Source of the DNA: Macrostomum lignano
Taxonomy: Eukaryota
Reading direction: 5' to 3'
DNA: 55,418 bases
NCBI GenBank assembly: GCA_002269645.1
Contig: NIVC01004203.1
Location: 1-55,418, forward strand
Shown: positions 9,036 through 41,629 of the stretch, piece after piece
Position numbering within the stretch: the first letter of the stretch is position 1
How the letters are laid out: each line of letters opens with the position of its first letter
Notes under the pieces: generated by a model
What the model saw: only the letters and a program-made list of their open reading frames with translations
What the model was told of the DNA's origin: nothing
The model's database searches: none
Made by a program: the position numbers and the translations under genes

Positions 9036-10003
9036 AGGAGGCTTTTCATATTACCAATTCCAGAATCAGAATCGGTTCGGATCTTCCAAGAAAAACAGCA
9101 GTATAACTATTTAATTCTGTTGAATGTTTGACTGCCTTAACAACCTTACTTAGCACAATTTTTCACTTTATTCTTGGCGATTGTCATTCAATAATAAAAA
9201 CTTTATAGCACGTATCTCCCTAGTTATGGAGACAAAAAGTTATACTTCACACAAATTGGTTCTGGTTCTGGAACCAGAGCAAGCAATATGAAAAGGCCCA
9301 AGAATTCCCCAGGTTTCAGGGATCCTCAGAGCACTCGGGTTTCAGAAGCCCCCAAGTTTCAGGAGCGCCCTACGTGTCAGGAGCCCCCCTCCGGTGTCAA
9401 CACCCCCTTAAGGTGTCAGAAGCGCTAAGCGTCGAATTAGAGCCCAGATACTAAAATATTGGGGCTTAAAAACTGCTTCTTAATGGTAAAATGGCCTTCC
9501 AAGTCCTCAAAGTATTTTTAAGTCCCACATCCAGGGAAAAAGTTTGCCAATGCTCGGAAGACTCGACACGCACACAGCTTGCTTGCATGCACATCGCAGA
9601 TGCTGTGTGCAGCTCGGCATCAATATTGAGCTCACAATAAGCAGTCCGAGTGCCGTACATGGTAGCAATTGCTTCTAAAAGAGCAGTCAGGCAATTTTTT
9701 TCCAAGCCTCTGCAGGTGCCTCTTGGTGTACAATTTAGCTCGTAGTGTGCGATCAGCGCCTCAAGGCTTTGGTTGGGCTTGAAAAAAGATAGTTGCAGAA
9801 AGATTTTCGCGCAAGTGATGCACACAAAGTTCCTTTTTTGCCAGCAAACAGAATGAAACGCCTAAGAATAGCTGCGCCGACTTGCATGCACCGCCCCTAA
9901 GCTCTGTTCTTTATTAGGGAACGGGTTGGGTTATCTAGGAACTAACTGAAAACACCAAGCTTACCAAGCTGCAGTTCAGGTATCAAAAGAAATTCAATTC
10001 ATC

Positions 10004-10891
10004 ATGGAAGTGGCAGCAAAAATGCCTAAAGAAATACAAGATGTTATGAAAGGCGGCAGCAATAAATCCTTTCAAAAACGATTGGGCAGCTGGCTGATCC
10101 TTCCAAGTGCCATGATTTTGTACCTGTCGCAGTTCTTGCTAGATTGCACTGCTGCCTCGGAGCTACAAGCGTTGACCTTTAACACAACGTGTCCTGAGCA
10201 GCTGACGTCTTACTGCTCCTGCACTGGCATAAACTGCACCGCCAATATCATTTATCTATTGCCCCTGTACATTCTGTTTGTAGTGATTGCTGGCATTCTG
10301 CTCATATGCATACTGGTTGTGTTCAGCACCTCCTGCTGCTGTGTGACTACCGCGAGGAAGGTTAGCTGCCTTTTAATTTGAGCTCTGTTACATTTAACTC
10401 TTTTATTACCCTGAAGCATTAAATTTTCAGACGAAAGCAACTCCCGGATCTACGGCGGGAGAATCCCGGCCGCCCCCAGCGAAAGCGACTCTCCGATTAG
10501 CTGCAGAATCCAAGCTGGCGGCAGCGCCCTGCTGCTCAGCCTGCTCATCTCGCTGCTGCACAATATCCCACTGAACGCTCTCCGAGCCCAGTATCTCTAC
10601 GCCTTCAGGAAATTTGTCCCGCTAAGAGGCCTCATCAAGCTGCTGCTACCATCCGCCTGCGCACTTTTGCTCGCCATATTCGCCTTTCTGTTCCGCGTTC
10701 CGTTCTCCTTCTGGGGCTGCTGCAACGATCTCCGCGGCTTCAGCACCACTGGAGTGGTGCGGGATGCCATAGGGAATCCTGGTGACAATGTCCTGCTGTC
10801 GAGGCCGTGGCAAGTCCTGCACTTCTGCCTCATCCTGCTGTCTATCTTTGACTGCCTGTGCGCTCTGCTGCCTCTTGTAATTGGCATCTGA
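10004..10891 (+). pseudogene. Orphan 5-TM family copy 2, frameshifted
   Basis: Exon 1 10004-10360, intron to ttttcag at 10430, exon 2 10431-10891. A 4-nt deletion (GTTC absent versus copies 3 and 5) just before the donor changes the phase from 1 to 0, so exon 2 is read out of frame to an early TGA. Confidence 0.7.
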
Positions 10892-11554
10892 GATGTGGCA
10901 GTTCTCTGAACTCTCGTAGCAAAGTTTATGTACCGTGTTGACAAAAAGACTGATATTCTGCTATTTAATTTCGCACGAAAAGCTTCTGAATTTGTTATAT
11001 TGTAAAATCTGTTTTTAAGCGTGAAAACTTTGTTTTACTATGTTTTACGTTATTGCACTATACGCGAACAAATCGGAAAAAAATTTAAAATAGTATAAAT
11101 ATACTATTTTATAGCTCTTTTGAGCTATAAAATGCCGCTTTAATATGAGTACCGGGAGTACCAGAAGTACGAGAAGTGCCACCAATCTGAGAGCAGACGG
11201 GATTGCTATTGTGGAGTTTCAAAGGACCCAAGAGCCGGATAGGGAGGCTTCACGACCCGTTATGTGTCCCGCGGGCTATGAGTTTACCGACCCTGTAATT
11301 TTATTCCCGAACGTATTTAGCAATTATAGCATTATTGTATTTATGTGCAATACAACAGAGAGTTCAGACTTGGGTAAAGCAATGCGAGACAATTTTTTTT
11401 GTCACACTGAAGCAACTGTGCTTAGCAAATGAAGCCGGGCTCCACCTATTCCTGAATAAATATTGTTTAAGTGCAGTAAGTGAAATAAATAGCTCGTAAA
11501 GCTGAAATTATCGTCTGATTAAACTCAGTGATGTACGGCAGGTCCCAACTGCAA

Positions 11555-14571: not shown

Positions 14572-15523
14572 CGAGTCTCAATGTAGAGTTTCGACAAGAA
14601 AAAAATATGTGAGTTGTGAGCTGAGCTGCTTTTTTAAAAATGCTTTGAGCTAAACACCGGTGTTTATTTGTATAGTTTAAGGCTAGTTGAGCTATTTCTG
14701 GCCGTAACGCTTAACATCTGCCTCCGAAGTTGGCATGTGCATCTTGGTGGGCAATTTAGCTCGTAGTGTGCATTCAACGTCTCTGCGCGTATGAGCTTTC
14801 GGCAGGGCTGGTAGGATGCATTAATAAGGAGCTAATTAATTTCAACTCTTGCCATTGTGCCTGGCAAAATGGGCAGGCAAATAGAATTTTGCATAGCCAA
14901 CCAGCGGGTTTTACAGCCGTGTGTCGGAACAAATCGACTGACTTGCAGCATCTGACACCCAGCCGCAACGGAAAAAACTGCCGTGCGCAACTGAGGCTTA
15001 AGCGGTGCCTTATAGTCAGTGCAGCTTATTAAATCAAAGAGCAAAACCCCTTTGGCACAGGCTATTCCTACTGTCTAAATGCACAACACTTAGCTCGTAC
15101 TTTATCTCGAATCGTTGAATACTGATAAAACTATAATTTACTTGGACAGATAATTTCTGGATAACTTGCACATTTTAGATCGTATACATGTATAATACAA
15201 TCCTAGTCACCAGATAAAGAAAACCAGTGAAATTTCTTGGAAAAAGACAGTCGCAGAAAGACTTGCGCGCAAAACATGCACGCTTAGTTCAATGCTTGCC
15301 AGCTGTACACAGTTGATGCCGGCTTCAACTCCGGAAATCGGCGGTTGACAGAGAAACCAAACGCAATACCTAAAAATAGCTGTACGGAGGCCGGACATAC
15401 ATGACTTAAGCTCTATAATTTATAATGGGAACGGGTTGGATTACCTAGAAACTAACTGATAACTCTTTAGTGAATTTGTTAAACCGCAGTTCAGGTATCA
15501 CTGAAATAGAAATTCAATTCATC

Positions 15524-16420
15524 ATGGAAGTGGCAGCCAAAATACCTGAAGCAATCGAAACTGCTGTTGAAGATGGCAACGGTGAATCCTTTCAGAAACG
15601 ATTGGGCAGCTGGCTGATCCTTCCAGGTGTCATGATTTTGTACCTGTCGCAGTTCTTGCTAGATTGCACCGCTGCCTCGGAGCTACAGACGTTGACCTTT
15701 AACGTAACGTGTCCTGAGCAGCTGACATCTCACTGCTCCTGCTCTGACAGAGAGTGCACCGCCAACATCAGCCATCTGAAACCGCTGTACATTGTGTTTG
15801 TTGTGGTTGCTGGCATTCTGCTCCTAGGCGTACTGATTGTGTTCAGCACCTCCTGCTGCTGTGTGACTACCGTTCGCGAGGAAGGTTAGCTGCCTTTAAT
15901 TTGAACTTTGTTACATTGAATTCTTCTATTACCCTGAAGCAGTAAATTTGCAGACAAAAGCGACTTACGGATCAGCAACAGGAGAGTCCAGCCCGGCCGC
16001 AGACGAAAGCGACTCAAGGATCAACAGCTAAAGAGAAACCGGGCTGGCCGCAGCGCCCTGCTGCTCAGCCTGCTCATCTCGCTGCTGCACACTGTCCCGC
16101 TGAACGCTCTGCGAGCTCAGTATCTCTACGCCTTCAAGAAATTTATCCCACTAAGAGGCCTCATCAAGCTGCTGCTACCATCCGCCTGCGCACTTTTGCT
16201 CGCCATATTCGCCTTCCTGTTCCGCGTTCCGTTCTCCTTTTGGGGCCGTTGCAGCGACCTCAGCGACTTCAGCACCGCTGGAGTGGTGCGGGCTGCAATC
16301 GGGAATCCTGATGACAATGTCCTGCTGTCGAGGCCGTGGCGCGTCCTGCACTTCTGCCTCATCCTGCTGTCCATTATTGACTGCCTGTGCGCTCTGCTGC
16401 CTCTTGTAATTGGCATCTGA
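15524..16420 (+). CDS. Orphan 5-TM family copy 3 (2 exons, 275 aa)
   Basis: Exon 1 15524-15884 (GAAG|gttagc, phase 1), 69-nt intron, exon 2 15954-16420 (tttgcag|AC); translation is open through SALLLSLLISLLH...LPLVIGI*. Confidence 0.8.
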
Positions 16421-17099
16421 GGCTTCAGTTCTCTGAACTTAAAGATTCTTTCAAGATTCTGGTAGAGTAGCTCGCTTTAGAGGCTATGTACATCAAAGAT
16501 GGGGGGTGCCGCCAACTCAGCGTGTTTTAGCTTGGAGTGTACGCTACTGCACCGTGTGTTAACTTGTTTCGATTGAAAACTACGTACATTAATTTATATT
16601 GTGTAATCAACTTATTACAGGTATATTTAATATTTATTCAACTGTTTATTAAAATTTTCTATTTCACTACTGCCCTGACGATGACCTACAAGGGTCGAAC
16701 TGCATTGGCAATTGAATTAAAGTAAATAAAAACAAGTTAATGTTTGTTCTCTCATTTATTTCAAGATTACCAGCAATATTCAGATTCAGTATCTCAAACT
16801 TAGCTCTTAAATCACCGTGAATGCCACTATTTTGTTACTCACGACTTCATGCGAACCTAAAATTCTATAGTTGCTCGGAGGAGATCCCGACCCAAATCCC
16901 AAATCCCCGATTGTTCTTAACTAGTCGTGACAGCACCTTTCCTTCAAGTAAGGTTGCTAAAAAGTGATATAAATAATAACTACTTATGCACAATGGCACA
17001 CGCATCAAATGAAACGAAAATACTCCTAATCAAGGCTCTGCCTGTGCAAAACTTTATCTTTGTGTCTTTTGAGCTAAAAATGGCGCTTCAACAGTAGGA

Positions 17100-17690
17100 G
17101 TACCGGAAGTATTGTACCACGAAGTGCCAGAAGTACCAAAGGTACTTGAAGTGCCAGAAGTAACCAGAAGAAACCAGAAGTAACCAGAAGTAACCAGAAG
17201 AAGTAACCAGAAGTAACCAGAAGAAGTAACCAGAAGAAACCAGAAGTAACCAGAAGTAACCAGAAGAAGTAACCAGAAGTAACCAGAAGTAACCAGAAGT
17301 AACCAGAAGAAACCAGAAGAAACCAGAAGTAACCAGAAGTAACCAGAAGTAACCAGAAGAAACCAGAAGTAACCAGAAGTAACCAGAAGAAACCAGAAGA
17401 AACCAGAAGAAACCAGAAGTGCCAGAAGTACCAAAGGTACTTGAAGTGCCAGAAGTAACCAGAAGTAACCAGAAGTAACCAGAAGTAACCAGAAGAAACC
17501 AGAAGAAACCAGAAGAAACCAGAAGAAACCAGAAGAAGAAACCAGAAGTAACCAGAAGTACCAAAGGAGTGCGAGTGCCAGCAGTGCCAGAAGTAATCAG
17601 AAGTACCAAAAGGTTCCAGAGGTACCAGAAGTGCCAGAAGTAACCAGTAAACCAGAGGTGCCAAAAGGGCCAGAAGTGCCAATAGAACTT
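17100..17690. repeat. Minisatellite with a 10-bp unit AGAAG(T/A)AACC
   Basis: Dozens of units; flanks are 9-mer gtgccagaa variants. Confidence 0.9.
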
Positions 17691-17821
17691 CAGCTTGACA
17701 GTTGAAGTTGCTGGCTCCGTGGACACTGCAAAACCCCATCAGCTTTAAACTGTGCCTTATAGTCAGTCTGCCTTTTTAAATTATTGAGCAAATGGCAGCT
17801 TCTACTGGCAGCAGCACGACA

Positions 17822-18107
17822 TTTGTCCCACTAGGAAGCCTTATCAAGCTGCTGCTACCATCCGCCTGCGCACTTTTGCTCGCCATATTCGCCTTCCTGT
17901 TCCGCGTTCCGTTCTCCTTCTGGGGCTGCTGCACCGAGCTCCGCAGCTTCAGCACCGCTGGAGTTGTGCTCGATGCCATCGGGAATCCTGATGACGCCGG
18001 TGTCCTCTGGACGAGGCCGTGGCAAGTCCTGCACTTCTGTCTCATTCTGCTATCCATCCATCATTGACTGCCTGTGCGCTCTGCTGGCTCTTCTAATTGG
18101 CATCTGA
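17822..18107 (+). pseudogene. Orphan 5-TM family copy 4: 3' fragment of exon 2
   Basis: Matches exon 2 from FVPL..IKLLLPSAC to GI*; exon 1 is absent; a 4-nt duplication (tccatccatc) shifts the frame. Confidence 0.8.
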
Positions 18108-18393
18108 GCTGTGGCATTTTTCTGAACTTTTTGGCAAATATTATTTAGCAATAATAAGCAATATTCAGATTTAGCATCTCAAACTTAGCTTTTAAATCTC
18201 GGTGAATGTCAGTGTTCTGCTAAATATGCATAATGCGTGCTCTAAGTTCATCTGGTATACATTAGTATCCGTCCTATGATAGTGCTCGGACGGAATCCCG
18301 ACCTAAATCCCTAATCCTCGACTGTTCTTGACTAGTCGTGACAACAGTTAACAGATATAAAAGTACTTCTGCAAAGTGGCAAGCACATCCAAT

Positions 18394-19193
18394 TGTCGTA
18401 ACCCGGGTCGGTTTGAGTGCCCAGTCCCAGGTACAATATGTTATACGTAATATAACAGGCGTAGTGACGCTCTGTCTGGTACTTGTATGGATACGAGCAG
18501 GCGTGGCGACGCTCTGCGATAATGGGTCGCTCCATCTGGTGTTGTGACACTCCGAGTTCACGCTGCGGCTCTAGGTGTGGTGACACTCTCGAGTGCTTCT
18601 AGTTTCGATACTGTAGGTTGTACACACTATATAAAGTAACCGGTACAGTACTACAATAATTATACAACGCTGCTGTGCTGCAGTGGTCACAGTCGCAGGC
18701 GTGATGACGCTCTAGCTATGGAACCACTGTTACGGCAAGGCCTCAGAAAAGCTAAAGAAGTGAATGAACTCGGGGTCTTACCGGTGCCAGAAGCTGTGAA
18801 GCTCGTTCGAATATCGCTAGCACTTGACCACTTGGCCACTTGGCTCGCAATTAATTGAGTCCTCGCAGTAAGAGACCGTCTAGACACGGCTCGCTTGAAA
18901 CAGGGTAGAGGGGCAGACAGTGTGAGAGAGAGAAACGCCAAACAAAAGAAATGACCTCTCAGCCAATCAGCGTGCCCGCCGAGCAGATCTGACTGAATGG
19001 GGGCTAGAGCGAAAAGCGCAAACTCACAGGCCCAGCCAATCAGTGGCCGCCGCGGGGAAAGACACAAGCCGTGCCGGGCGACCCCCAACCAGTTCTGCCT
19101 GGTTGGGCAGCCAGAACTGGTCCGGGATGGCCGCCTAGGGCGCACGGAAAAAACTCAAAAAGTGCAAGAGCACTCAACAGGCCAGACACCACA
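18394..19193. mobile_element. Solo LTR (800 bp) carrying a spliced-leader-like sequence
   Basis: Ends TGTCG...CCACA (TG..CA); 4-bp TSD caat/aaat with one mismatch; interrupts a segment that is contiguous in the paralogous flank at ~16990-17040 (catcaaatgaa). Confidence 0.7.
18847..18890 (-). other. Spliced-leader-exon-like sequence
   Basis: GCCGTGTCTAGACGGTCTCTTACTGCGAGGACTCAATTAATTGC. The last 35 nt match the M. lignano SL as recalled (..AGACGGTCTCTTACTGCGAAGACTCAATTTATTGCATG) at 33/35; it also matches 22158-22180 within this window. Confidence 0.75.
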
Positions 19194-19299
19194 AAATGAA
19201 TCAAATAAACTTTTAAACTAAATGAAAATACTCGTAACCAGGAGCTCTGCATTTTACGTTTGTGTCTTTTGAGCTACAAAATGGCGCTTTAACAGTAGG

Positions 19300-19500
19300 A
19301 GTGCCAGCAGTACCAGAAGAGCCAGAAGTGCCAGCAGTACCAGAAGAGCCAGAAGTGCCAGCAGTACCAGAAGAGCCAGAAGTGCCAGAAGTGCCAGAAG
19401 TACCAGAAATATCAGAAGTATCAGAAATATCAGAAGTACCAGAAATATCAGAAGTACCAGAGATATCAGAAGCTGCAGAAGTACCAGAGGCACCAAAAGC
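19300..19500. repeat. Minisatellite with a 9/27-bp unit (GT(G/A)CCAGAA variants)
   Basis: Repeated ccagaa core behind the same flank as the 17100 array. Confidence 0.85.
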
Positions 19501-20896
19501 ACCATTATATACCTGGCTGACAAAAATACTGATATTCTGCTAATTAATTTCCCGCCAAAAGCTTCTCACTTTGTTATGCTGTAAAATTTGTTTCAATATG
19601 TCATACGTTATTGCACTAAACGCGAACCAGTGGAAATACATTAAAAATGGTATAAGTATACCGGCAGTGGAGCGCGAGGACCAAAAAAATTTAACCTGCT
19701 TTTCTTTTGTTCTCGTTTTAATCAATTCTTAGCCTTGCTTTCTCTTAGTCATTTGTCGAGGAGCAGTCTCAACAGTGTTTGCTGGTAAAGCAGTGGTTGC
19801 AGATTAAGCACCAGGGGCTTTAGCGCCTGAAGCGTTTTATTGCAGAGAAAAGGACGTTTTGCCTATGGAACAGTGCTTGACTGAATAAAGCGTGTTGCAG
19901 TGGGAAGCGGAAGGGCAAATTGCCAAGTGCCAGTCCCCATACTGTCGAGACCAAAGAAAAGGGGGGAAGTCCCAGGGGAAATTAAGATGTGATGCCTAGA
20001 CATATAAACGTGATGCGTCAGTGAGTCGTGATAGACAGTAAATCCGTGAAGGAAGCCAGGATTCCTCTCTCGATCATTAATAATGACGTTTTGGGCTTAG
20101 AATCAGTAGCCAACAGTGTCTTGCAGCTCGGGCACTGGAGCTCGGGCACTGGAACACCAGGGGCACATTGTACCAACGGTAATTCCATAGTTTTAGTTAT
20201 AGATAGTAAGCACATCATTTAGTTTAAAAATACTAATTTACTAGTAGTATCTGTGATTTTTACTGTCTAAATGCACGTCACTTTATTTATCTCGAATCGT
20301 TGAGTACTGATTGAATATTAGATACTATATTAGATTATATTATAGTATATTTGCAATAGGGGCTTCGTTTTTAATGTATAGTTTTGCTAGAACTTTTCAT
20401 TTTTGGAACTCCGCCAGCTGTAAGGCAAATGAAATAAACTCGGTTTCAATCCTTGTTTCTTCTCTCGATCATTCGAGCTATTCTGATATACTTCAACTAT
20501 TCTAATTTGGAGACGAAACTGATAATCAGCTTCGGAGCTAGTGCTTACTCTCGTGTTACTTATTTCGAGTCGTAGATAGTGACATAAGAATAGCCCCAAG
20601 ATTGGGAGAGTAAACCGTTTATAACGAGACCTATTAGATTTAGTAAAACAACTCTATAGTGGATAGTGCGAGAAATCAATAAGTATTGAGCTCTGAGCTC
20701 ACTAGACTACTTTTATATTTTTGGTACAAGCGAACGTAAGAATGATTGATGCATAAAAGCACAAGGGTTTTAAAAGAACGCACACACTAGTCACGCTCAA
20801 TGAAGCATTGTCAGTCAATCGATAAAATAAAACAGCGAGTGTACTCAATGTACACCCGCTGAGTCACGCGATACGACAACTCTCCCATCGTAGTTT

Positions 20897-22180
20897 GTTG
20901 TTGTTAAACGGGGTGGGAAGCTACGGGGCTACCCGCGGATCAGCCCTGGGAGGGGCTCTGCCGCAGAGGGCACTACCAAGGGCACAGATAAGACTGTGAA
21001 CCCGAGATACCCAAACCAATTTAGTTGGGAGAGGGCGAGGGACCTCAAGTCTATGGTACAAGACACCGCCAAACCAACAGTGGAATCAGGGACGGTGCTA
21101 GGACCGAGTCCACCCAGGCCACCCCCCAGCAGACAGGTCCTCGGGAGTGCGCGAAAAAACAGAAATTGGAGAGCGAAATGCTAAGCGGTCCGAGTGAGGA
21201 GTTACTCCTAAACCTACGGAAATGGCTTAAACTATTGGAGCGAGTCTGGGCAGCTTATTACCAAGAGCGATCCTAAACAGCATAGTCTCCACTACTGTAG
21301 GTCTCGAGCCTCAAGGCTTTTCACTACCCAGCTCTATTTTGGAGTGAGACTGGAAGGCTTGTTTCCGAGGGGGAGACTCTAGGCGGACATTGCTACGCCT
21401 CTATTGCTACCAACCCAAGGGCATCGCCTATCCAGCTCATTATTGGGGGCCAGGCCAAGGGGTCGGGAGAAGAGGCACCCAGGGCAAGAGGACTCCGGAC
21501 TCAGCCGGTTGTCCCCGGTTCGGGACGAACATCCTTCCCAGGACACCAATCCACTGTCAGGATGAGAGCCAGAGACACGCAAGCAGGGACCTTACAGCAG
21601 GAGCCAGGAGATGGACCCGAGGACAGGGCAAGATGGACCGGGCAAGGGCAGAGCTCATAACTCCAAAGATTGGAAGGCTTCTAGTGGCCAGATAAAAGAA
21701 TAAAAGAATAAAAAGCCACAAAGGCACAAAGCTAAAGGGATAAAACAGCGCTGGGATGCCAGCCCAGAAAAAAAGAATGGCAGTGGGGAGGAGCACCATA
21801 GCCCTAAAGCAGGCAGCTTGCCGGCCTGCAGCCCGGGTGCTCAGCCTCAGGGCTGGCATGCTACTGGGTCTACCGTACACCTTTGTGAATTGGTCGTTCT
21901 TTCCTGCAGGGCGGGTTCGACCGGGGGGCTCAGTCCCGACCTAGCCACACTGCAGTCCAGAGAACCTACTCACTCCGGGCACCACCCCCCCTAAACCAAG
22001 GCCGAGGGCCAAATAATTGGAATGTACACCTAAGAAAGATAGGGTTTATTTTTAGATGGGCACAGCCCCTCCGGGGCGGACCCTTAGAAATTGGCATAGC
22101 CAATCGGATTGCGCACAACCCTTAGACAAGCTGCCAGAGAGGCAACCAGGGTAAAAACAGTCAGAGACCGTCTTTACGGC
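20897..22180 (-). mobile_element. 1.28-kb nested insertion of unknown class, with an SL-like 5' end and an (AAC)n 3' tail
   Basis: Flanked by the direct repeat (C)GTAGTTT at 20889-20896 and 22180-22187; removing it restores pol ..RLNYDGRV.. and the PPT/LTR junction; no TIR; no recognisable ORF. Confidence 0.8.
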
Positions 22181-25100
22181 GTAGTTTAGGCGGACGGGAA
22201 TCGATCGAGCTCTGCTTGATCTTCTGAGAGCTTGTGCTGGTCCTTGATCTGGAAGTTGCAGCGGTCGAGGCTGCGACGGTGGCGGCGGCGTTGGCGGCGG
22301 CGTTGGCGGCGGCGTTGGCGGCGGCGTTGGCGGCGGCGGCGGCGGCGACGGTGGCGGTGGCGGCGGCAGCTGCAGCGGCGGTGGCGGCGGAACCAACGGT
22401 TGCGGTAGTGGAGGCCTGAGCTCACCGCTAAATTCCGGATTCGTCTGCACCGGCCCAGGCCGCTGGGAAGTCTTGTCGATTCGCATCTGTTCTGTGTGCC
22501 GCCGCACCATCCGGTTGTTCGGCAGAATGCACTTGTACCAGTTGCTGCCCTCCTTGCCGACCACCATAGCCGATGTCCAGGTTCGCTCGTTCCCGCGGCT
22601 AAAGTCTTGAACGAACACCGCCTCGCCCTCCTCGAAGACTCGTCTTTGTGCGCCCGAGTTGTGCTGCTGCTTCTGCTTTTCCTGGCTCTCGAGAACTCGC
22701 TTGGCGATGTCTGGCCTCGGTACGTCAAGCAGGCTACGCAGCGTCCGGTGCATCAGCAGCTCACACGGTGCCACTCCCGTCGTTGGATGCGGTGTAGTAC
22801 GGTAGCTGAGCAGGAATCTGGCCAGCTGGGTCTCCAGGGAGCTGCCGTCATTGGCCTGCTTCTTCAGGGAGTTCTTAACAGTTTGCACTGCTCGCTCAGC
22901 TTGGCCATTGGAAGCCGGGTGGTAGGGTGGCGTGCGGATGTGCCGAATTCCGTTCTTGGCACAAAAGGCGTCGAACTCGAAGCGAAGGTCGTCGTCGCTG
23001 TCGTCACGTACACATCGAGCCACTTTGAGAAGGAGTCGACCACCACCAGCAGCATCCGACCTTGGACGGGACCGGCAAAATCGACGTGGATTCTCGACCA
23101 AGGCCTTGCCGTTAGCGGCCATGGCTGCAGCGGAGCTTCTGGTCCGGCTCGCTGGTCTTTCTGGCAGTCCGTGCAGCTTGCTGCCTTGGCCTCAATGTCA
23201 CGATCCATGCCCGGCCACCATATGTAACTTCTGGCAAGCGACTTCATCCGGGATGCTCCAGGGTGTCCAACATGCAGGCAGTCGAGCAAGCGGCTTTGGC
23301 CGACTTCAGGAATGACGACACGACTGCCCCAGAGAACGCAGCCGTCTTGAACTGACAATTCCTGGTGCCGTTTCCCGAAGGGCACCCAATCGGAAGTCCA
23401 GGAATCTCGGTCTGGCCAGGCCGAGAGACAGTAAAGAATTACGCGTGACAATGTAGGGTCGCGGCGGGACCAGGTGCGCACGTCTGATGAAGTCACCGGC
23501 CCGGCGTCCAGGCAGTCCATCACTTGCACGACTTCTGGAGGCACCGGAACTTCCTTAGGGCCCGCTGATGCAGGAAGGCGGCTTAAGGCGTCTGCTCGGA
23601 GTATGGAGACCCCGCTGCGGTGTACAAGACGGTACCGGTACGCGGTCAGCAGCAACGCCCATCGTTGGACTCGGCCGGAAGCCAGGGCTGGAAGCGGTCG
23701 CTCTTGTCCTAGAAGGCCGAGAAGCGGCCGGTGGTCGGTCAACAGGTTGAACTCCCGACCAAACAGATAGTGATGGAATTTTTTCACACCGAAAACCAGC
23801 GCCAAGGCCTCCTTCTCCAGCTGGCAGTAATTTTTCTCTGCTGAGCTGAGGCTGCGCGAAGCGTACGCGATCGGCTTGTCCATGCCGTCCAGACGGTGGA
23901 ATATGACGGCACCGAGCCCGTACTGCGATGCGTCGCACTCCAGGTAGAGCTCTTCTGCAGCGTTATAGTGGACTAGGACGCTGGGGTGCGTGAGCAGCTG
24001 CTTTGCCGCGCTGAACGCGTCCGCCTCGCTGCGATCCCACTGCCACCTTGAGTTCTTCTCCAAGAGCCTGTGCAGCGGGGCCAGAACACTAGAGAGATTT
24101 GGCAAAAACTTGCCGTAGTAGTTGATGAGGCCCAAGAAGCTCCTCAGTTGAGTCGTGTTAGTCGGTGCAGGCGAGTCCAGCACAGCTCGAACCTTATCGT
24201 CCAGCGGGTGCAGCCCTTCGGCGTCGATGCGGTGGCCTAGGTACGTGACTTCGTCCCTGAAAAAGGTGCACTTCTCAAGCTTGCAGGTCAGCCCGGACTC
24301 CTTGAAGACCTTCAGAACTGCTCTCAGGTTGCGGAGGTGACTGGCGTCGTCTTCGCCTGTGATGATGACATCGTCGATGAAGGATGCAGAGTGCGGAATT
24401 CCTCGCAGTAAGCTGTCCATCACCCGCTGAAACACGCTGGGGGCGATCGACACGCCGAAAGGCAGACGGGTGTAGCGAAGAAGTCCCAGCGAGGTGTTGA
24501 TGGTACAGAGCTCTTGAGCATCCTCATCCAGGGGAAGCTGCGAAAATGCCTGGCTCAGATCCAGTTTTGAGAACTTCTTACCGCCAGCCAAGCGTCAAAA
24601 CAGCTCGTCGATGTTCGGCAGCGGGTAAGCCTCAGGCCGGATAGCTGCGTTGACCGACTGCTTGAAATCAGCGCAGATGCGCACGCTGCCGTCGGACTTC
24701 ATTACCGGCACGATCGGGGACGCCCAGTCGGAATTTTTGACCGGCACCAGGATTCCTTGGTCGATTTCCTTCTTCAGCTGCTGCTCAACCTTCTCGCGCA
24801 GCGCAAACGGCACCGGCCGCGCCTTATAGAACCTTGGTCTGGCGTTCTCCTTCAGACTGATGGACACCGGCTTGCCGCTGAACTCGCCCAAACCTTGGAA
24901 GACTTCTGAGAACTCCTGTAGCAACTCCTTGGCTGCATCAGCTTCTTCCATACGCTTGATAGATTGCCAGTCCAGCCGCAGGCGGTGTAGCCAGTCTCGA
25001 CCAAGGAGGCTCGGACCACAACCGGCGACAACCAGCAGCGGCAGCTGTTCCTCGGCCGAACCTTGCGAAGCTCGCACGCGTACGAAGAGCTGACCGAGGA

Positions 25101-26166
25101 CACGGACGGTTTGACCGGTGTACGTACTGAGCTGAACCGTTGACGCAGACAGAGACATCCGGCTTCCCAGGTTTTCCTTGAACGTACGTTCGGACATCAG
25201 CGATACGGATGCCCCCGTGTCCACCTCCATCTCGAATCGCTTCTCCTCGATGAAGACAGAGGTCACGATTGGAGGAAACCTGGCCTGCGATCGGTCAGCA
25301 CCCAGATGGTAGAAGGGATAAGCGACCTCGGCTGGGCTGGGCGGCTCGGCGGCCTGAGCTGAGCTGCTGTCTGAAGGCTGCTGGTCAACCAGCTGGTGCA
25401 TTTGCATGTGCTGTGTCCCCGCCTTGCATGCCTTCGCGGTGTGCCCGGTTTTGCTGCAGTTGAAACAGCGTTTGTCCGCGAAGGGACATTTGGCTGCCGG
25501 ATGGCGAGTCGACAAGCAGCGGAAACAGCGCCGCCGGCCTTCTGTTCCAGACTGACGGCTGTCTTGCGGTCGCTGTCGTTCCATTCGAAGCACGGAGTCG
25601 CTCTCTGTCGCTGACGATGCCGATGTCACTGCCGCAGGTTTTGCTGAGCCCAGCGATTGACAGTTTTTGGCTGCTGACTCGCCCGCTTGCGCGATCTGTT
25701 TGGCAGTTACGAGGGTCAGCTCGGCCTCCATCAGGAGCCGGCGCTGGATTTGTTGGTCCGCGATGCCGCACACCAGCCTGTCGCGCAGCATGTCAGACAG
25801 GCTGCCGCCGTAATTGCAGAACTCCGCCAGCTTCCGCAGCTCCGCAAGGAACTCTGCCACCGACTCTCCAGGGCGCTGAACTCGGTTATTGAAGTGGAAC
25901 CTCTGAATGATCTTACTCGGCCTTGGGTTGAAATGAGCGCTCAGCAGCTCGCGTATTTCGGCATAGGATTTGTCCGCGACTTTGGCTGGAGAGCAGAGGC
26001 TTCTGGCCAACTGGAAGGTTTTCCTACCGCAGACGCTCAGCAGGGTGGCCCTCTTTTTACTTTCGTCGGTGATGTCCTGTGCCAGGAAATGTTGCTCCAG
26101 ACGCTCCTGGTACTCATCCCAGGTTTCCTCGGAGTCCTCATATTCTCCGATTGCGTGGTTAGGCAT
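22181..26166 (-). pseudogene. gag-pol of the Gypsy element (2 CCHC knuckles, protease, RT, RNase H, integrase), disrupted
   Basis: CFRC..H...C and CFNC..GH....C; VDTGAS; WASPIV..ADF; LPFG..FIDD; HHCC LHVGH..C..C; DFAGP; PYHPASNGQAER. In-frame TGA at 24597-24595; deletion plus frameshift near 22985 removes the second integrase Asp region. Confidence 0.92.
22277..22385. repeat. (GGC)n-rich microsatellite giving a poly-Pro tract in the integrase C-terminus
   Basis: ggcggcggcgttggcggcggcg.. translates to PPPTPPPT on the minus strand. Confidence 0.85.
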
Positions 26167-26178
26167 TGCTCAGCCACA

Positions 26179-26191
26179 ATCCTCGTCGCCA
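26179..26191 (-). other. Primer-binding site complementary to tRNA-Ser(GCU)
   Basis: TGGCGACGAGGAT, one nt after the 5' LTR; complementary to the conserved eukaryotic tRNA-Ser(GCU) 3' end AUCCUCGUCGCCA. Confidence 0.8.
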
Positions 26192-27132
26192 CTAAAACAA
26201 CTCTATAGTGGTTAGTGCGAGAAATCAAAAGTATTGAGCTCTGAGCTCACTAGACTACTTTTATATTTTGGTAAAAAGCGAACGTAAGAATGATTGATGC
26301 ATAAAAGCACAAGGGTTTTAAAAGAACGCACACACTAGTCACGCTCAATGAAGCATTGTCAGTCAATCGATAAAATAAAACAGCGAGTGTACTCAATGTA
26401 CACCCGCTGAGTCACGCGATACGACATTTAGAATCTAAGAAATCGTCTTAGAAGTCAGAACATCTACCAAAGGGTAAGAACATCCGCACCCGGGGATCTG
26501 AAAACTCGCCTAAGGGCAGAAAACCTACCAGAGTGAAAGCCGTGACCCTCTGATCCCGGTAACGCCTCAGGACTGAGAGAGAAAACCTCAATAGGCGAGT
26601 TGTAATACATAGGATAGGATAAAAGTACAGTGTCCTAAGACCGCTCAGGCTAGTAGTATATAATACGCTACCGACTTTATATGAGACGTTACCAGTTCAG
26701 CAGTAAGCTAAATTTAGAAGAAACTAGCAATCAGCGCCCCCCCGTTGGGGAGCCAAAAAATGCAGTACAAGTTTTTTTAATAAACTACATGTAAGCGTCT
26801 CTTTGCATTATACCTCAGCAACCCCTTGTAAGCCTTAACATGTCAGCAATCCCCCCACAAGCCTTAGCATACTCCCCCCTTGAAATCTCAGCTATTCCCC
26901 CCGTAAGCCTTGACATGTTAGCGATGCCCCCCCATAAACCATCTGAAAAATCCCCTGTTAACCTTGAAACCCGCTAAAATCTAACCCTCAACCCAAAACT
27001 AACCTAAACCTAACTTTAACCCAACCTAAAGCCTTGAAATCTCGGCAATTCTTCTCCCCTAAGCCTTGATATTTTAGTGATTCCTTCTTTAAGCATCACA
27101 GCACTATAGCGATTCCCTCCAACCCTTGACAT

Positions 27133-28817
27133 TGTAGCGTACTTTAATGACTTTCCCGAAATTTCTTCAGATTTCTAAAAGTCAAAAACTATTTCCAGAA
27201 ACTTCTTTGAGTTAGCAGCTAATCTATAACATACGCATATAAATAGTAAATAATTAATTATCACTTAAGTATTAATGTTCTAGTTATATTTACGTAATGT
27301 ATATAATTAAAGAGTTATTTCGCTTTGTTAAAATTAGCTGAATCTTTCTAGAAATTTCCGGAAGGCAATAACAAAGCTATAAATACACGGCGGCAGCAGT
27401 GAAACAAATCACTCTCTCACTCTCCCCTTGTTTTCTCTTTGATCAAAGTTACGTTGGTAAATAACTAAATGAACCACCGCCTTGCTCTTATTCAATAATC
27501 AAATTAAAGAAAATTCTACAATGGTCCGGTGAGGCGTCGAGCGATCTCTTTCAGAATGCGTGTGCATACGCACGCCCGTGACCGCTCATCATGCCATCAT
27601 TCGCGATCAGCACCGCCGTCGCTACCAACGCCAAAACATAGCACACCACTGTCTACTGCCCAGCGTCATCACTTCTCAGCGTGTCTCCCGTCGCCGTCAT
27701 GTAATATAAATTTAGCTAAACCGTCGCCAACCTCCCTGTTCCCACATCTAAAAACGACACGGTATCTCGTCGGTGACCAAATAAACTACGCCTACACGGG
27801 CTCACGAACGGCCATCCGATCGAGCCATCCGCGCAGCTACATGTATGACCTCCACGTATACGTACCAGCGACATCAACCGCAGCACCGCGCAGACGCGAC
27901 GTTAGCACTGGGTCTCATCCGTCGCGAAAAAACTCAATTAGCAATCCACAATAAACCGGCTGGCACTACCGGCGAGTCTACACATTGCAACCTTCTACGA
28001 GGTTCCTCGATAAGCCGGTGGTCAACCAGCTGGCCTAACCCGAACAACACCCATGAATCTTCTCGGTTCTGTTTCAGCCGCAGAGCGACTACCCGCCTTG
28101 ATCCCTGGCGCCTATCCGTAGTTCGGGAGTCGTCTGTCTGCAAACCGGCAATAACCTGCAGGTCGTTCAAACTACAGCGACAAACCGCCATCCTGGAACA
28201 GTGCCGCAGAGACCACGGACTTGTTAACCGCCATAATGTACAATCAGTCTGAACTCCTCGACCGCAGTGCGAGCCCAGCTGCCCCTATCCGTCTCGCGGT
28301 GAACCCAGTCGTCATCTGTATTAATTTTCAGCAGCGTAATTTCAACCTGGACTTTATTCACGGTAACCCAGCAACTAATTAACATTAATTAACCGTCATA
28401 CCTTAGGGACTCCGTCTCCCGTGGGGGGAACTGTTGTAGCGTACTTTAATGACTTTCCCGAAATTTCTTCAGATTTCTAAAAGTCAAAAACTATTTCCAG
28501 AAACTTCTTTGAGTTAGCAGCTAATCTATAACATACGCATATAAATAGTAAATAATTAATTATCACTTAAGTATTAATGTTCTAATTATATTTACGTAAT
28601 GTATATAATTAAAGAGTTATTTCGCTTTGTTAAAATTAGCTGAATCTTTCTAGAAATTTCCGGAAGGCAATAACAAAGCTATAAATACACGGCGGCAGCA
28701 GTGAAACAAATCACTCACTCTCCCCTTGTTTTCTCTTTGATCTAAGTTACGTTGGTAAATAACTAAATGAACCACCGCCTTGCTCTTATTCAATAATCAA
28801 TTAAAGAAAATTCTACA
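27133..28817 (+). mobile_element. Non-autonomous LTR retroelement (TRIM/LARD-like)
   Basis: LTRs 27133-27520 and 28435-28817 (TGTAG...CTACA, about 4 differences); 4-bp TSD ACAT (27129-27132, 28818-28821); PBS-like TGGTCCG at 27522; PPT GGGGGGAA before the 3' LTR; ~0.9-kb interior with no retroelement protein motifs. Confidence 0.9.
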
Positions 28818-29149
28818 ACATCGTAGCAATTCCCAAATGAATTTTTTAACTTCGACATGACTCTTCTTTTATGTATACATAGTGCTACTTTTCTTTTTTA
28901 CATGACTCTTCTTCTATCAGCCCCCCCCCGTTACGAGCCAACAAAGAATGTAATAAAAAAATTGAGCAAACTACATGTACTATGAAGTAGCTTCTGACGT
29001 TTGCTTTGACATCTCAGAAACCCTCCCCCCGTAATCTCAGTTATTCTCCGTAAGCCTTGACATCTCAGTAATTCTCCCCAGCACAGCACAAAAGCTTCAT
29101 TTACTTTTTACATGGCACTTCTTTTATGTCTGACAGGACGCTTATTTTG

Positions 29150-30325: not shown

Positions 30326-30855
30326 TTTTAGGATTTAAAGAGAGAAATGAACACCTAGCTACCACGGCTTGGTGACTCAACGGTGGGATTATTCTGACAG
30401 AGAACTAACACCACCAACACAACTTGGTGACAGCATTATAGTATTAGATTTATTTGAGCATTGTGATAAAACACTAATTTAGTAGGACGGATAATTTCTC
30501 GATAAACCGGTATTATATACATTTATAATGCAACCCCAGCTATTAGTTGGTGAAGACTAGTGAAATTTCTTGGAAAAGGATAGTCGCAGAAAGATTTGCG
30601 CACAACTGCTGCACACACGCAGTTCCATGTTTTCCTGCTGTACGCAGATGATGCCCCGGTTCAACTCCGAAAATCGGCGGTTGACGGAGAAACCAAACGC
30701 AATGACTGAAAATAGCAGTACAGACATGCATGCCCTGTAGCTCTGCAGTTTATAACAGAACAGTTCGGATTATCTAGGAACTGACTGAAAACTCGTCAGT
30801 GAATTTAATAAACTACATTTTAGGTATCTTTGCAATAGAATTCAAATAATTAATC

Positions 30856-32577
30856 ATGGAAGTGGCCGCCAAAATACCTGAAGCAATCGATGCTGCCATT
30901 GAAGGCCGCAACGCTGAATCCTTTCAAAAACGATTGGGCAGCTGGCTGATCCTTCCAGGTGTCATGATTTTGTACCTGTCGCAGTTCGTGCTAGATTGCA
31001 CCGCTGCCTCGGAGCTACAGACGTTGACCTTTAACGTAACGTGTCCTGAGCAGCTGACATCTCACTGCTCCTGCTCTGACAGAGACTGCACCGCAGCCAT
31101 CAGCCATCTGCAACCGCTGTACATTCTGTTTGTAGTGATTGCAGGCATTCTGCTCATAGGCGTACTGATTGTGTTCAGCACCTCCTGCTGCTGTGTGACT
31201 ACCGTTCGCGAGGAAGGTTAGCTGCCTTTAATTTGAACTTTGTTACATTGAATTCTTTTACTACTCTGAAGAATTAAATTTTCAGACGAAAGAGACTCTC
31301 CGATCGACGGCGAGGAAATCCGGCCCGGCCCCAGGGAAAGAGACTCTTGGATCGACGGCGGGGGAATCCGGCCCGGCCCCAGGGAAAGAGACTCTCGGAT
31401 CGACGGCGGGGGAATCCGGCCCGGCCCCAGGGAAAGAGACTCTTGGATCGACGGCGGGGGAATCCGGCCCGGCAACAGGGAAAGAGACTCTCGGATCGAC
31501 GGCGAATGGCCCGGCCCCAGGGAAAGAGACTCTTGGATCGACGGCGGGGGAATCCGGCCCGGCAACAGGGAAAGAGACTCTCGGATCGACGGCGGACGGC
31601 CCGGCCCCAGGGAAAGAGACTCTTGGATCGACGGCGGGGGAATCCGGCCCGGCAACAGGGAAAGAGACTCTTGGATCGACGGCGGGGGAATCCGGCCCGG
31701 CCCCAGGGAAAGAGACTCTCGGATCGACGGCGGACGGCCCGGCCCCAGGGAAAGAGATTCTCGGATTGACGGCGGAGGAATCCGGCCCGGCCCCAGGGAA
31801 AGAGACTCTCGGATCGACGGCGGACGGCCCGGCCCCAGGGAAAGAGACTCTCGGATCGACGGCGGAGGAATCCGGCACGGCCCCAGCGAAAGCGACTCTC
31901 GGATCGACGGCGGACGGCCCGGCCCCAGGGAAAGCGACTCTCGGATTGACGGCGGAGGAATCCGGCCCGGCCCCAGCGAAAGAGACTCTCGGATCGACGG
32001 CGGACGGCCCGGCCCCAGGGAAAGCGACTCTCGGATCGACGGCGGAGGAATCCGGCACGGCCCCAGCGAAAGCGACTCTCGGATCGACGGCGAGGAAATC
32101 CGGCCCGGCCCCAGAGAAAGCGACTCTCGGATCGACGGCGAGGAAATCCGGCCCGGCCCCAGAGAAAGCGACTCTCCGATCAACAGCAGGGGAATCCGGG
32201 CCTGTCGCAGCGCCCTGCTGCTCAGCCTGCTCATCTCGCTGCTGCACACTGTCCCGCTGAACGCTCTTCGAGCTCAGTATCTCCATGCCTTCAGGAAATT
32301 TATCCCACTAAGAGGCCTCATCAAGCTGCTGCTACCACCCGTCTGCGCACTTTTGCTCGCCATATTCGCCTTTCTGTTCCGCGTTCCGTTCTCCTTCTGG
32401 GGCCGCTGCAGCGACCTCCGCGGCTTCAGCACCGCTGGAGTGGTGCGGGATGCCATAGGGAATCCTGGTGATAATGTCCTGCTGTCGAGGCCGTGGCGAG
32501 TCCTGCACTTCTGTCTGATCCTGCTGTCCATCATTGACTGTCTGTGCGCTCTGCTGGCTCTTCTACTTGGCATCTGA
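30856..32577 (+). CDS. Orphan 5-TM family copy 5 (2 exons, 550 aa) with a repeat-expanded loop
   Basis: Exon 1 30856-31216 (phase 1), exon 2 31286-32577; the frame is preserved across 20 repeat units into SALLLSLL..LLGI*. Confidence 0.78.
31288..32190 (+). repeat. Coding minisatellite, 48/42-bp units x20 (RERDSRIDGGGIRPGP / RERDSRIDGGRPGP)
   Basis: Unit starts are separated by 13 intervals of 48 nt and 6 of 42 nt (876 nt in total). Confidence 0.92.
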
Positions 32578-33345: not shown

Positions 33346-33556
33346 GCCACGACCACAGCTGCCCTCGCCTTAAGCTCGAGGAACTCAGCAGCCGGAGCTC
33401 GATGCTCGATATCTATATCAACCTGGGACAAACACAGAATAATGTAGAAGTGCCTTTTCATTACCTTTCATTGGTTGCATTTCATTATTGTTTTTTTTAT
33501 ATTTTTTTCATTATTATTTCATCAGTGCCTTTCCTTTTCATTGGATTATGTAGATG

Positions 33557-41516: not shown

Positions 41517-41629
41517 CCGTTTCTTGAATTTTTAGAACCTCTTGTACACCTTTTGTCTCTTGTAAATTTTTACTGTTTATTGTTACAGTAATCAAATTTT
41601 AGTTGTTATAATCCTTTACTTTTTGTTGT

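What the first reader, a model, noticed from the sequence alone, without database searches (positions are those of the whole stretch)
18847..18890. Near-complete spliced-leader exon embedded in a solo LTR (possible cis-encoded SL mimicry)
Seen: an 800-bp TG..CA solo LTR contains, on the minus strand, GCCGTGTCTAGACGGTCTCTTACTGCGAGGACTCAATTAATTGC. It is preceded by two CTGATTGGCTG (CCAAT) boxes, has no TATA on that strand, and keeps a 5' CCGT..ACGG hairpin. Recalled knowledge (verify): 33 of its last 35 nt match the Macrostomum lignano SL. The terminal AUG, a following GT donor and an Sm site are all absent, so it does not look like an SL RNA gene. Inference: the LTR may start a transcript that looks trans-spliced without splicing, borrowing SL-dependent capping, translation or stability, or evading surveillance. 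I recall a loosely similar case for some nematode LTR elements, so novelty needs a literature check.
Basis: partly seen in the sequence, partly recalled or inferred. Interest (0 to 1): 0.9.

Follow-up and report, generated by a model that had tools for sequence, protein, structure and literature searches.

The report
Spliced-leader relic in a solo LTR
A decayed copy of the Macrostomum flatworm spliced leader sits inside a retrotransposon-type insertion, with a shorter second copy in a neighbouring retrotransposon, and both are most likely fossils left by reverse transcription, a kind of relic already noted in other flatworms.

Summary
Window 18847-18890 (minus strand) matches the published Macrostomum spliced leader (SL) at 33 of 35 core positions. 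Against the 45-nt SL it matches 39 of 45, starting at SL nucleotide 1. No shuffle reproduced it.

It lies in an ~800-bp TG...CA insertion (18394-19193) that is absent from a paralogous site at 17010/17011.

It is not an SL RNA gene. Two real SL RNA genes recovered from public contigs share only the exon with it. The ATG, the adjacent GT donor, the Sm-like site and the three-hairpin fold are missing.

It covers SL nt 1-23, in the sense orientation, inside an intact Ty3/gypsy element. Both fragments start at SL nt 1 and end at different internal points. This fits reverse transcriptase running to the capped 5' end of an SL-bearing RNA.

A 2025 study of parasitic flatworms discarded 597 loci with partial leaders in LTR and LINE elements, with a similar reading (reverse-transcribed trans-spliced element RNA).

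"SL mimicry" is untested. The start site and even the orientation of the LTR are unresolved, and a trimethylguanosine cap needs the missing Sm site. No other family copy could be reached.

Verdict: new member of a known kind, modest interest.

The parts
18844..18890 (-). SL relic 1. It covers SL nt 1 to 42-45: GCCGT, loop GTCTA instead of AAA, a 35-nt core with 2 substitutions, and GAG in place of ATG.
   Evidence: SL sequences come from PMC8629364 and PMC10468722 Table S3.
18394..19193 (-). LTR-like solo insertion of ~800 bp. On the minus strand it runs TGTGG...CGACA. The flanks CAAT and AAAT look like an imperfect 4-bp target-site duplication. The strand given is the SL-sense strand; the true sense strand of the LTR is unresolved.
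   Evidence: A paralogous empty site lies at 17010/17011. The ends were read. No second copy exists in the window.
19033..19043 (-). Distal CCAAT (NF-Y type) box CTGATTGGCTG, about 148 nt upstream of SL nt 1.
18960..18970 (-). Proximal CCAAT box CTGATTGGCTG, about 75 nt upstream of SL nt 1.
19077..19132 (.). Imperfect inverted repeat (hairpin) in the part of the insertion upstream of the SL relic.
   Evidence: Self-BLAST.
18820..18843 (-). Three tandem copies of an 8-mer (CCAAGTGG CCAAGTGG TCAAGTGC), directly after the relic.
   Evidence: Read directly from the sequence.
18771..18782 (-). Splice-donor-like GGTAAGACCCCG, 108 nt after SL nt 1. It resembles the real SL RNA exon-intron junction GGTAAGACACCG.
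   Evidence: It ranks 2 of 57 GTAAG sites and the shuffle p is about 0.01, so the result is inconclusive.
18628..18636 (+). Canonical TATA box TATATAAAG on the strand opposite the SL relic. On that strand it is preceded by the tandem motifs at 18456-18553.
18456..18713 (-). Four copies of an 18-nt motif RGAGYGTCRYNACRCCWG, starting at 18713, 18553, 18515 and 18473. A looser fifth copy near 18589 was seen by eye only.
22158..22180 (-). SL relic 2: GCCGTAAAGACGGTCTCTGACTG, covering SL nt 1-23 (18 nt exact, then 4 of 5). It is sense to gag-pol and lies in the C-terminal tail of the integrase reading frame.
   Evidence: None of 100 shuffles matched.
20644..26426 (-). Full-length Ty3/gypsy element that carries relic 2. 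It has 235-bp LTRs (97.4% identical), the target-site duplication TTTAG, a primer-binding site TGGCGACGAGG and a polypurine tract GGGAGAG. The order is gag-PR, RT-RNaseH-IN.
17010..17011 (.). Empty paralogous site that delimits the insertion.

Best explanation
The motif is a molecular fossil, not a gene. It is a copy of the 5' part of the Macrostomum spliced leader that was written into a retroelement by reverse transcription. It is now carried in a solo LTR-like insertion.

Proposed mechanism (inferred):
1. Inside the virus-like particle, reverse transcriptase copies an RNA that carries the SL at its 5' end. That RNA could be a trans-spliced transcript of the element, a co-packaged trans-spliced mRNA, or the SL RNA itself.
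2. The enzyme runs to the capped end, SL nt 1, and then switches template back to the element.
3. The product carries SL sequence that always begins at nt 1 and ends wherever the enzyme entered or the exon ended.
4. If the event happened at the 5' end of the genomic RNA, SL nt 1 marks an ancestral U3/R boundary.

After capture the segment decayed: two substitutions, a changed loop, and ATG turned into GAG. The element was later reduced to a solo LTR. It lies 20 nt after the stop codon of one copy of a tandem Gly/Thr/Ser-repeat gene and about 655 nt upstream of the next copy.

Shown here:
- SL homology limited to the exon.
- No SL RNA gene features.
- Insertion status.
- A second relic in an intact gypsy element, in the sense orientation.

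Inferred: the reverse-transcriptase mechanism, the LTR identity, and the lack of function.
For: - The SL identity is far beyond chance.
- Two real SL RNA genes were recovered from public contigs (L003, L004). They share only the exon with the window. Local alignment stops at nt 8-42, and GCCGT at nt 1-5 also matches. Nothing matches upstream of nt 1 or directly after ATTGC.
- The real SL RNAs fold into three stem-loops with z of -3.6 and -4.6. The window segment gives z of -0.02.
- Comparison with the paralogous empty site shows an ~800-bp insertion with TG...CA ends.
- A second SL fragment, nt 1-23, lies in an intact Ty3/gypsy element in the sense orientation.
- These are the only two SL-like sites in 55 kb, even when searched with 11-mers.
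- Both fragments start at nt 1 and end at different internal points. The second ends in a 4-nt ACTG microhomology.
- Literature: PMC12582326 discarded 597 candidate loci with partial leader sequences in LTR and LINE elements, and attributed them to integration of trans-spliced retrotransposon transcripts. Transcripts of the C. elegans gypsy element Cer1 are SL1 trans-spliced.
Against: - Only one copy of the 800-bp element is available. Its LTR identity, its sense strand and the conservation of the relic are therefore untested.
- The target-site duplication is imperfect (CAAT/AAAT).
- A canonical TATA with upstream tandem repeats lies on the opposite strand. The end heptamer TGTCGTA matches the 5' end of the neighbouring gypsy LTR in that orientation. 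If that is the sense strand, the relic is antisense, which an RNA-capture model does not predict.
- Two strong CCAAT boxes 75 and 148 nt upstream of SL nt 1, and a strong donor 108 nt downstream, are what a working promoter and first exon would look like. A function is therefore not excluded.
- A weak echo of the SL RNA intron lies 63 nt downstream (GGTAAGACCCCG, then TTCTTTAGC; p about 0.01). It hints at an origin from unspliced SL RNA or from the gene rather than from a mature mRNA.
Confidence: 0.6

Rival explanations
1. Functional cis-encoded SL leader. The LTR promoter starts transcription at or near 18890. Element RNAs, or LTR-driven host chimeras, then carry an SL-like 5' leader without trans-splicing and gain some SL-linked property.
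For: - Two consensus NF-Y boxes lie at -75 and -148 from SL nt 1.
- The relic starts at SL nt 1.
- A strong donor GGTAAGAC lies 108 nt downstream.
- The next tandem paralog starts about 655 nt downstream on the same strand.
- In Echinococcus, solo LTRs of ta-TRIM start transcripts that splice in cis to a former trans-splice acceptor (PMC4558846).
Against: - No transcript data are available.
- The sense strand of the insertion is unresolved.
- The trimethylguanosine cap depends on the Sm site of the SL RNA, which is absent. This rests on established snRNA biology.
- The ATG is lost and 6 of 45 positions plus the loop length differ.
- Relic 2 sits inside a coding tail, where mimicry makes no sense. 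A passive origin therefore covers both relics.
- Conservation across copies is untested.
Confidence: 0.12
2. The relic is a fragment of an SL RNA gene or of a whole unspliced SL RNA (a pseudogene), captured by the element. A 63-nt insertion, including the 8-mer triplication, was then placed between exon and intron.
For: - GGTAAGACCCCG 63 nt downstream resembles the real junction GGTAAGACACCG.
- TTCTTTAGC resembles the real Sm-like TTTTTAGC at roughly the right distance.
- The alignment score ranks 2 of 57 GTAAG sites, with shuffle p about 0.01.
- For relic 2, 10 of 11 bases upstream resemble the region upstream of the SL gene in L003.
Against: - The signal is marginal, and GGTAAGA is simply the splice-donor consensus.
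- No hairpins II or III are present, and the fold is no better than shuffles.
- Relic 1 shows no upstream similarity.
- The upstream resemblance of relic 2 is absent from L004 and adds only 6 score units.
Confidence: 0.15
3. An active variant SL RNA gene with a long 108-nt exon, carried by the LTR.
For: An SL-like 5' end, a donor at 18781, and U-rich stretches after the donor.
Against: - No canonical or Macrostomum-type Sm site flanked by hairpins is present.
- Fold z is -0.02, against -3.6 and -4.6 for real genes.
- Only one SL sequence is reported for M. lignano (PMC8629364, PMC12582326).
- The variant was not found in metagenome, GTDB or IMG/VR scans that allowed it.
Confidence: 0.03
4. Chance resemblance, or an assembly or cDNA contamination artefact.
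For: None beyond the fact that only one copy of the element was seen.
Against: - None of 100 shuffles gave a match.
- The relic differs from the canonical SL, so it is not a contaminating cDNA read.
- It sits in a collinear insertion relative to a paralog.
Confidence: 0.01

Closest known systems
Partial SL sequences in LTR and LINE loci of parasitic flatworms (PMC12582326, Mol Biol Evol 2025)
   Same: Both are SL-homologous segments with no other SL RNA gene feature, sitting in or next to LTR or LINE elements. [quoted passage not shown]
   Different: That report covers cestodes and trematodes and gives only a count of discarded loci (597). It gives no anatomy. Here the host is a free-living Macrostomum-type genome, and one relic is nearly full length. 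The two relics share a fixed start at nt 1 with variable 3' ends. That pattern points to run-off and template switching rather than only to trans-spliced element RNA.
Relic DinoSL sequences in dinoflagellate retrogenes (Slamovits and Keeling 2008; PMC6050394, PMC5585692)
   Same: In both cases a genome-encoded copy of a spliced leader records reverse transcription of a trans-spliced RNA.
   Different: The dinoflagellate relics sit at the 5' end of retroposed protein-coding genes, often stacked. Here the relics lie inside retrotransposon sequence: one in an LTR-like insertion, the other in the integrase tail.
Cer1 (C. elegans Ty3/gypsy) SL1 trans-spliced subgenomic RNA (PMC3315495)
   Same: It shows that LTR-retrotransposon transcripts can be SL trans-spliced. 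This provides the substrate for capture.
   Different: In Cer1 the SL is added to the RNA and is not encoded in the element's DNA.
ta-TRIM solo LTRs of Echinococcus acting as promoters that splice to former trans-splice acceptors (PMC4558846)
   Same: Both involve a solo LTR upstream of a gene that supplies a first exon and a donor.
   Different: The ta-TRIM LTR is not reported to contain SL sequence. Transcription from the LTR in this window is untested.
SL-gene-specific non-LTR retrotransposons (SLACS, CZAR, CRE, NeSL-1; from my own knowledge)
   Same: Both are physical associations between SL sequence and a retroelement.
   Different: Those elements insert into functional SL RNA genes. Here a piece of SL lies inside the element and no SL gene is nearby.

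Membership tests
SL RNA gene (Macrostomum type) | The 45-nt SL exon sequence | tested here: met
   39 of 45 positions match with a 2-nt loop insertion, and 33 of 35 in the core. The exon is diverged here, whereas it is 45 of 45 identical in L003, L004 and M. cliftonense.
SL RNA gene (Macrostomum type) | Exon ends in AUG, followed at once by a GUAAG donor paired with the exon in stem I | tested here: not met
   The window reads ATTGC GAG CC. The real genes read ATTGC ATG GTAAGACACCG. A donor-like site appears only 63 nt further on.
SL RNA gene (Macrostomum type) | Sm-like site (UAUUUUUAGC) between two hairpins, with a stable three-stem fold | tested here: not met
   Fold z is -0.02 against -3.6 and -4.6 for the real genes, and hairpins II and III are absent. 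TTCTTTAGC is only a weak echo.
Solo LTR of an LTR retrotransposon | A discrete insertion relative to an empty site, with TG...CA termini | tested here: met
   The empty paralogous site is at 17010/17011. The ends are TGTGG...CGACA.
Solo LTR of an LTR retrotransposon | Target-site duplication of 4-6 bp | tested here: inconclusive
   CAAT and AAAT match at 3 of 4 positions. A 21-nt indel next to the right end blurs the boundary.
Solo LTR of an LTR retrotransposon | The same sequence found as paired repeats flanking a gag-pol core with a primer-binding site and a polypurine tract elsewhere in the genome | not testable with these tools
   No other copy is in the window. Protein-database, exact-match and pattern scans found none. 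The source species is absent from the reachable collections.
Solo LTR of an LTR retrotransposon | Promoter and polyadenylation signals that define U3, R and U5 on one strand | tested here: inconclusive
   The CCAAT boxes and the donor are on the minus strand. A canonical TATA with upstream repeats is on the plus strand. AATAAA is on neither strand.
Reverse-transcription relic of a spliced leader | SL homology that starts at RNA nt 1 and does not extend into the gene's upstream flank | tested here: met
   Both relics start at GCCGT. Relic 1 has no upstream similarity. Relic 2 has only a weak 10-of-11 match to L003 that is absent in L004.
Reverse-transcription relic of a spliced leader | Located in retroelement sequence, in sense orientation to the element RNA | tested here: inconclusive
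   This is met for relic 2, which is sense to gag-pol in an intact gypsy element. For relic 1 the element's strand is unresolved.
SL-gene-specific non-LTR retrotransposon insertion (SLACS/NeSL type) | A functional SL RNA gene interrupted at a fixed site by a non-LTR element | tested here: not met
   No SL gene features flank the relic. The window has no non-LTR element next to it.

The most novel reading that the evidence does not exclude
The 800-bp element could belong to an LTR family whose R region begins with a captured spliced leader. Every element transcript, and every host transcript driven by a solo LTR, would then start with a cis-encoded SL-like leader and end its 108-nt first exon in a strong donor. 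Such LTRs could take over trans-splice acceptor sites of downstream genes, here the next tandem paralog, while keeping an SL-like 5' UTR. A shared SL could also give reverse transcriptase a homology patch for recombination with host mRNAs.
Probability: 0.1. Interest if true: 0.7.

Novelty: new member of a known kind. Interest (0 to 1): 0.3.

Why it matters
Genome-encoded SL copies are a practical trap. They mimic SL RNA genes in homology searches, and they can make cis-transcribed RNAs look trans-spliced when SL-containing reads are trimmed and mapped. One published M. lignano "SL RNA" was later judged to be misassigned, because it maps to the 5' end of a trans-spliced protein-coding gene (PMC8629364).

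Two relics in a single 55-kb window suggest such copies may be common in this genome. That could bias counts of trans-spliced genes.

Mechanistically, the pattern of a fixed start at nt 1 and a variable 3' end is a readable footprint. It shows reverse transcriptase running off capped SL-bearing RNAs inside retroelement particles. If the functional reading were true, it would be a new way for a transposon to imitate host mRNA. Nothing here shows that.

Tried and rejected
Searches for other copies or for the source organism:
- Other copies of the insertion in the window: none, by sensitive self-BLAST.
- Exact-product look-up of the 152-aa frame that spans the relic: not on record.
- A six-frame chimeric protein query built from the insertion, to fish family copies from the 5.8-billion-protein collection: no hits.
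- Source organism through host proteins: exact look-ups of a GPCR and an ankyrin protein found nothing, and the GPCR homology search found nothing.
- The integrase query gave hits of 59% identity or less, so the species and the gypsy family are not in the collection.
- Pattern scans that allowed the variant bases. The metagenome scan gave only canonical SLs: one real gene and two trans-spliced mRNAs. GTDB gave one real gene, in a mis-binned contig. IMG/VR gave none.
- An 18-mer scan of IMG/VR gave one GC-rich phage contig. This is a chance hit that stops after 18 nt.

Other checks:
- Rfam has no family that matches the insertion or the real Macrostomum-type SL RNA genes.
- The supplements of the M. 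lignano LTR paper and the Wasik 2015 paper are not held.

Rejected ideas:
- The insertion is the LTR of the neighbouring gypsy or BEL element. No similarity was found.
- A LINE-mediated processed retrocopy. The SL lies 303 nt inside the insertion and there is no poly(A) tail.
- A SINE or ribozyme-bearing element. Rfam found nothing.
- A primer-binding site after the insertion. The flank is host sequence, homologous to the paralog.

Full report
**1. Observation**

The minus strand of 18847-18890 reads GCCGTGTCTAGACGGTCTCTTACTGCGAGGACTCAATTAATTGC.
- The M. lignano SL is CGGTCTCTTACTGCGAAGACTCAATTTATTGCATG (PMC8629364).
- The transcript-assembled SLs of M. cliftonense (45 nt, GCCGTAAAGACGG...TTGCATG) and M. 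hystrix are identical over the shared part (PMC10468722, Table S3).

The window motif matches 33 of 35 core positions. Counted by hand against the 45-nt SL it matches 39 of 45, beginning at SL nt 1. The differences are:
- loop AAA changed to GTCTA;
- A>G and T>A in the core;
- ATG changed to GAG.

None of 100 dinucleotide shuffles gave a match. The two CTGATTGGCTG boxes are real and are the only exact copies in the window.

**2. The surrounding element**

The region belongs to a tandem array of repeat-rich paralogs. Aligning the copy at 16.7-17.1 kb with the copy that holds the motif shows collinear flanks. About 800 bp are present only in the second copy. The empty site is at 17010/17011 and the filled site spans 18394-19193.

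The ends read TGTGG...CGACA on the minus strand. The flanks CAAT and AAAT look like a 4-bp target-site duplication with one mismatch. Sequence after the insertion is host sequence, not a primer-binding site. "Solo LTR" is therefore a reasonable label but is not proven.
- No second copy exists in the window.
- The insertion is unrelated to the full-length Ty3/gypsy element at 20644-26426 and to the BEL/Pao fragment at 53329-55274.

The insertion begins 20 nt after the stop codon (19213-19215) of a Gly/Thr/Ser-repeat reading frame. It lies about 655 nt upstream of the ATG (17739) of the next copy. All of these are on the minus strand.

**3. It is not an SL RNA gene**

A pattern scan of public metagenomes returned a genomic contig, L003, with a genuine SL RNA gene, plus two trans-spliced mRNAs that begin with the SL. 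A scan of GTDB genomes returned a mis-binned flatworm contig, L004. It carries a U1 snRNA gene (Rfam 151.7 bits) and a second genuine SL RNA gene about 300 nt downstream.

Both real genes share these features:
- The 45-nt exon is unchanged.
- It is followed by GTAAGACACCG, a hairpin, the Sm-like UAUUUUUAGC and a terminal hairpin.
- They fold into three stems with z-scores of -3.6 and -4.6.

The window shares only the exon with them.
- The base after ATTGC GAG is C, not a GT donor.
- The 131 nt from 18890 fold no better than shuffles (z = -0.02).

A donor-like GGTAAGACCCCG lies 63 nt further on, followed by TTCTTTAGC. It faintly recalls the real intron. It ranks 2 of 57 GTAAG sites in the window, with shuffle p about 0.01. 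I treat that as inconclusive.

**4. A second relic**

Sliding 16-mers of the SL over both strands found one further site. It is 22158-22180 (minus), GCCGTAAAGACGGTCTCTGACTG, covering SL nt 1-23 with 18 exact bases (none of 100 shuffles matched). Even 11-mers of the SL occur nowhere else in the window.

This site lies in the C-terminal tail of the integrase frame of the Ty3/gypsy element, on the element's coding strand. That element is bona fide:
- 235-bp LTRs, 97.4% identical;
- target-site duplication TTTAG;
- primer-binding site TGGCGACGAGG;
- polypurine tract GGGAGAG;
- gag-PR, RT-RNaseH-IN domains.

Homology to the SL ends in a 4-nt ACTG overlap with the following element sequence.

**5. 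Mechanism**

Both relics begin at the first base of the transcript-defined SL. They end at different internal positions, about nt 42-45 and nt 23. That pattern is expected if reverse transcriptase copies an SL-bearing RNA down to its capped 5' end and then switches template. The RNA could be a trans-spliced element transcript, a co-packaged mRNA, or the SL RNA.

The pattern is not expected from DNA-level duplication of an SL gene, which would carry flanks. For relic 2 it is also not expected from simple integration of a trans-spliced element RNA, which would end at nt 45.

This mechanism is inferred, not shown. If relic 1 arose at the 5' end of a genomic RNA, SL nt 1 marks an old U3/R boundary. 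The CCAAT boxes at -75 and -148 would then be U3 promoter elements.

**6. Caveats on the functional reading**

- The sense strand of the insertion is unresolved. The plus strand has a canonical TATATAAAG at 18628-18636, preceded by three of the ~18-nt tandem motifs (at 18456-18553). Its terminal heptamer TGTCGTA equals the 5' end of the gypsy LTR.
- Neither strand has AATAAA.
- No transcript data can be reached from here.
- By established knowledge of snRNA and SL RNA maturation, cap trimethylation follows Sm-core assembly. The Sm site is absent, so a cis-encoded leader would carry an ordinary cap.
- The mimicry idea therefore remains possible but unsupported.

**7. Comparison with what is known**

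- PMC12582326 (2025) screened SL RNA loci in 24 parasitic flatworms. It discarded 597 candidates associated mainly with LTR and LINE elements, whose only SL RNA feature was a partial leader. [quoted passage not shown]
- Dinoflagellate retrogenes carry relic leaders.
- Cer1 RNAs are SL1 trans-spliced.
- Echinococcus solo LTRs splice into former trans-splice acceptors.
- PMC8629364 reports that an earlier M. lignano "SL RNA" in fact maps to the 5' end of a trans-spliced protein-coding gene.

The present case is thus a new member of a known kind. Two points may be new: the free-living host, and the pattern of a fixed start at nt 1 with a variable 3' end. I found no paper that describes SL sequence in Macrostomum LTRs.

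**8. What could not be done**

Exact-product look-ups, a six-frame protein query and three homology searches showed that the source species is not in the reachable collections.

**9. Verdict**

The sequence is SL-derived, sits in an LTR-like insertion, and is not an SL gene. Mimicry is unsupported.
- Best explanation: a reverse-transcription relic, confidence 0.6.
- Novelty: new member of a known kind.
- Interest: 0.3.

Noticed in passing
window 22158-22180 (-): A second SL-derived fragment (SL nt 1-23, 18 nt exact) lies inside the integrase tail of the neighbouring Ty3/gypsy element, sense to gag-pol. The 11 bases upstream (CGCC-TAAACT) loosely resemble the bases upstream of the real SL gene in L003.
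   Followed up: yes
window 20644-26426 (-): Full-length Ty3/gypsy element with 235-bp LTRs (97.4% identical), target-site duplication TTTAG, a primer-binding site and a polypurine tract. The coding region is split into three reading frames (gag-PR 24595-26166, RT-RNaseH-IN 22864-24591, IN C-terminal part 22052-23122). About 1.2 kb with no long reading frame lies before the 3' LTR.
   Followed up: partly
window 27132-28818 (+): TRIM-like miniature LTR element. Two 390-bp direct repeats (98% identical, TTGTAG...CTACAA) flank about 900 bp. A primer-binding-site-like TGGTCCGGTGAGG follows the first repeat and a G-rich tract precedes the second. No clear target-site duplication was seen.
   Followed up: partly
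window 53329-55274 (-): BEL/Pao-type pol fragment (integrase plus DUF5641) lying close to the window end (its last reading frame ends at 55274).
   Followed up: no
window 9996-11300, 15516-17740, 17708-19800, 30848-32700 (-): Tandem array of paralogous genes built largely of short tandem repeats (Gly/Thr/Ser-rich in one frame). They have 85-93% identical upstream blocks and no Pfam match. The SL-bearing insertion lies in the spacer between two copies.
   Followed up: partly
window 33415-34410, 37038-37691, 38322-39066, 39457-40048, 41482-42349, 44354-45053: Many long minisatellite arrays (periods 16-41 nt, 90-100% identical units). Several lie in or between the two rhodopsin-type GPCR genes at 35955-37715 and 40302-41516.
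   Followed up: no
L004 1121-1283 and 1589-1697: A contig filed under a 'Flavobacteriaceae MAG' (JAGQZA010000190.1) is flatworm DNA. It carries a U1 snRNA gene and a genuine Macrostomum-type SL RNA gene about 300 nt apart. This is contamination of a public bacterial bin.
   Followed up: partly
L003 601-614: The real SL RNA gene in this metagenome contig is preceded by a partial duplicate of its own 5' end (GCCGTAAACTCTTT before GCCGTAAAGACGG).
   Followed up: no
window 19077-19132: An imperfect hairpin (a stem of about 13 bp by eye, around a CCCAAC loop) lies in the part of the insertion upstream of the CCAAT boxes.
   Followed up: no
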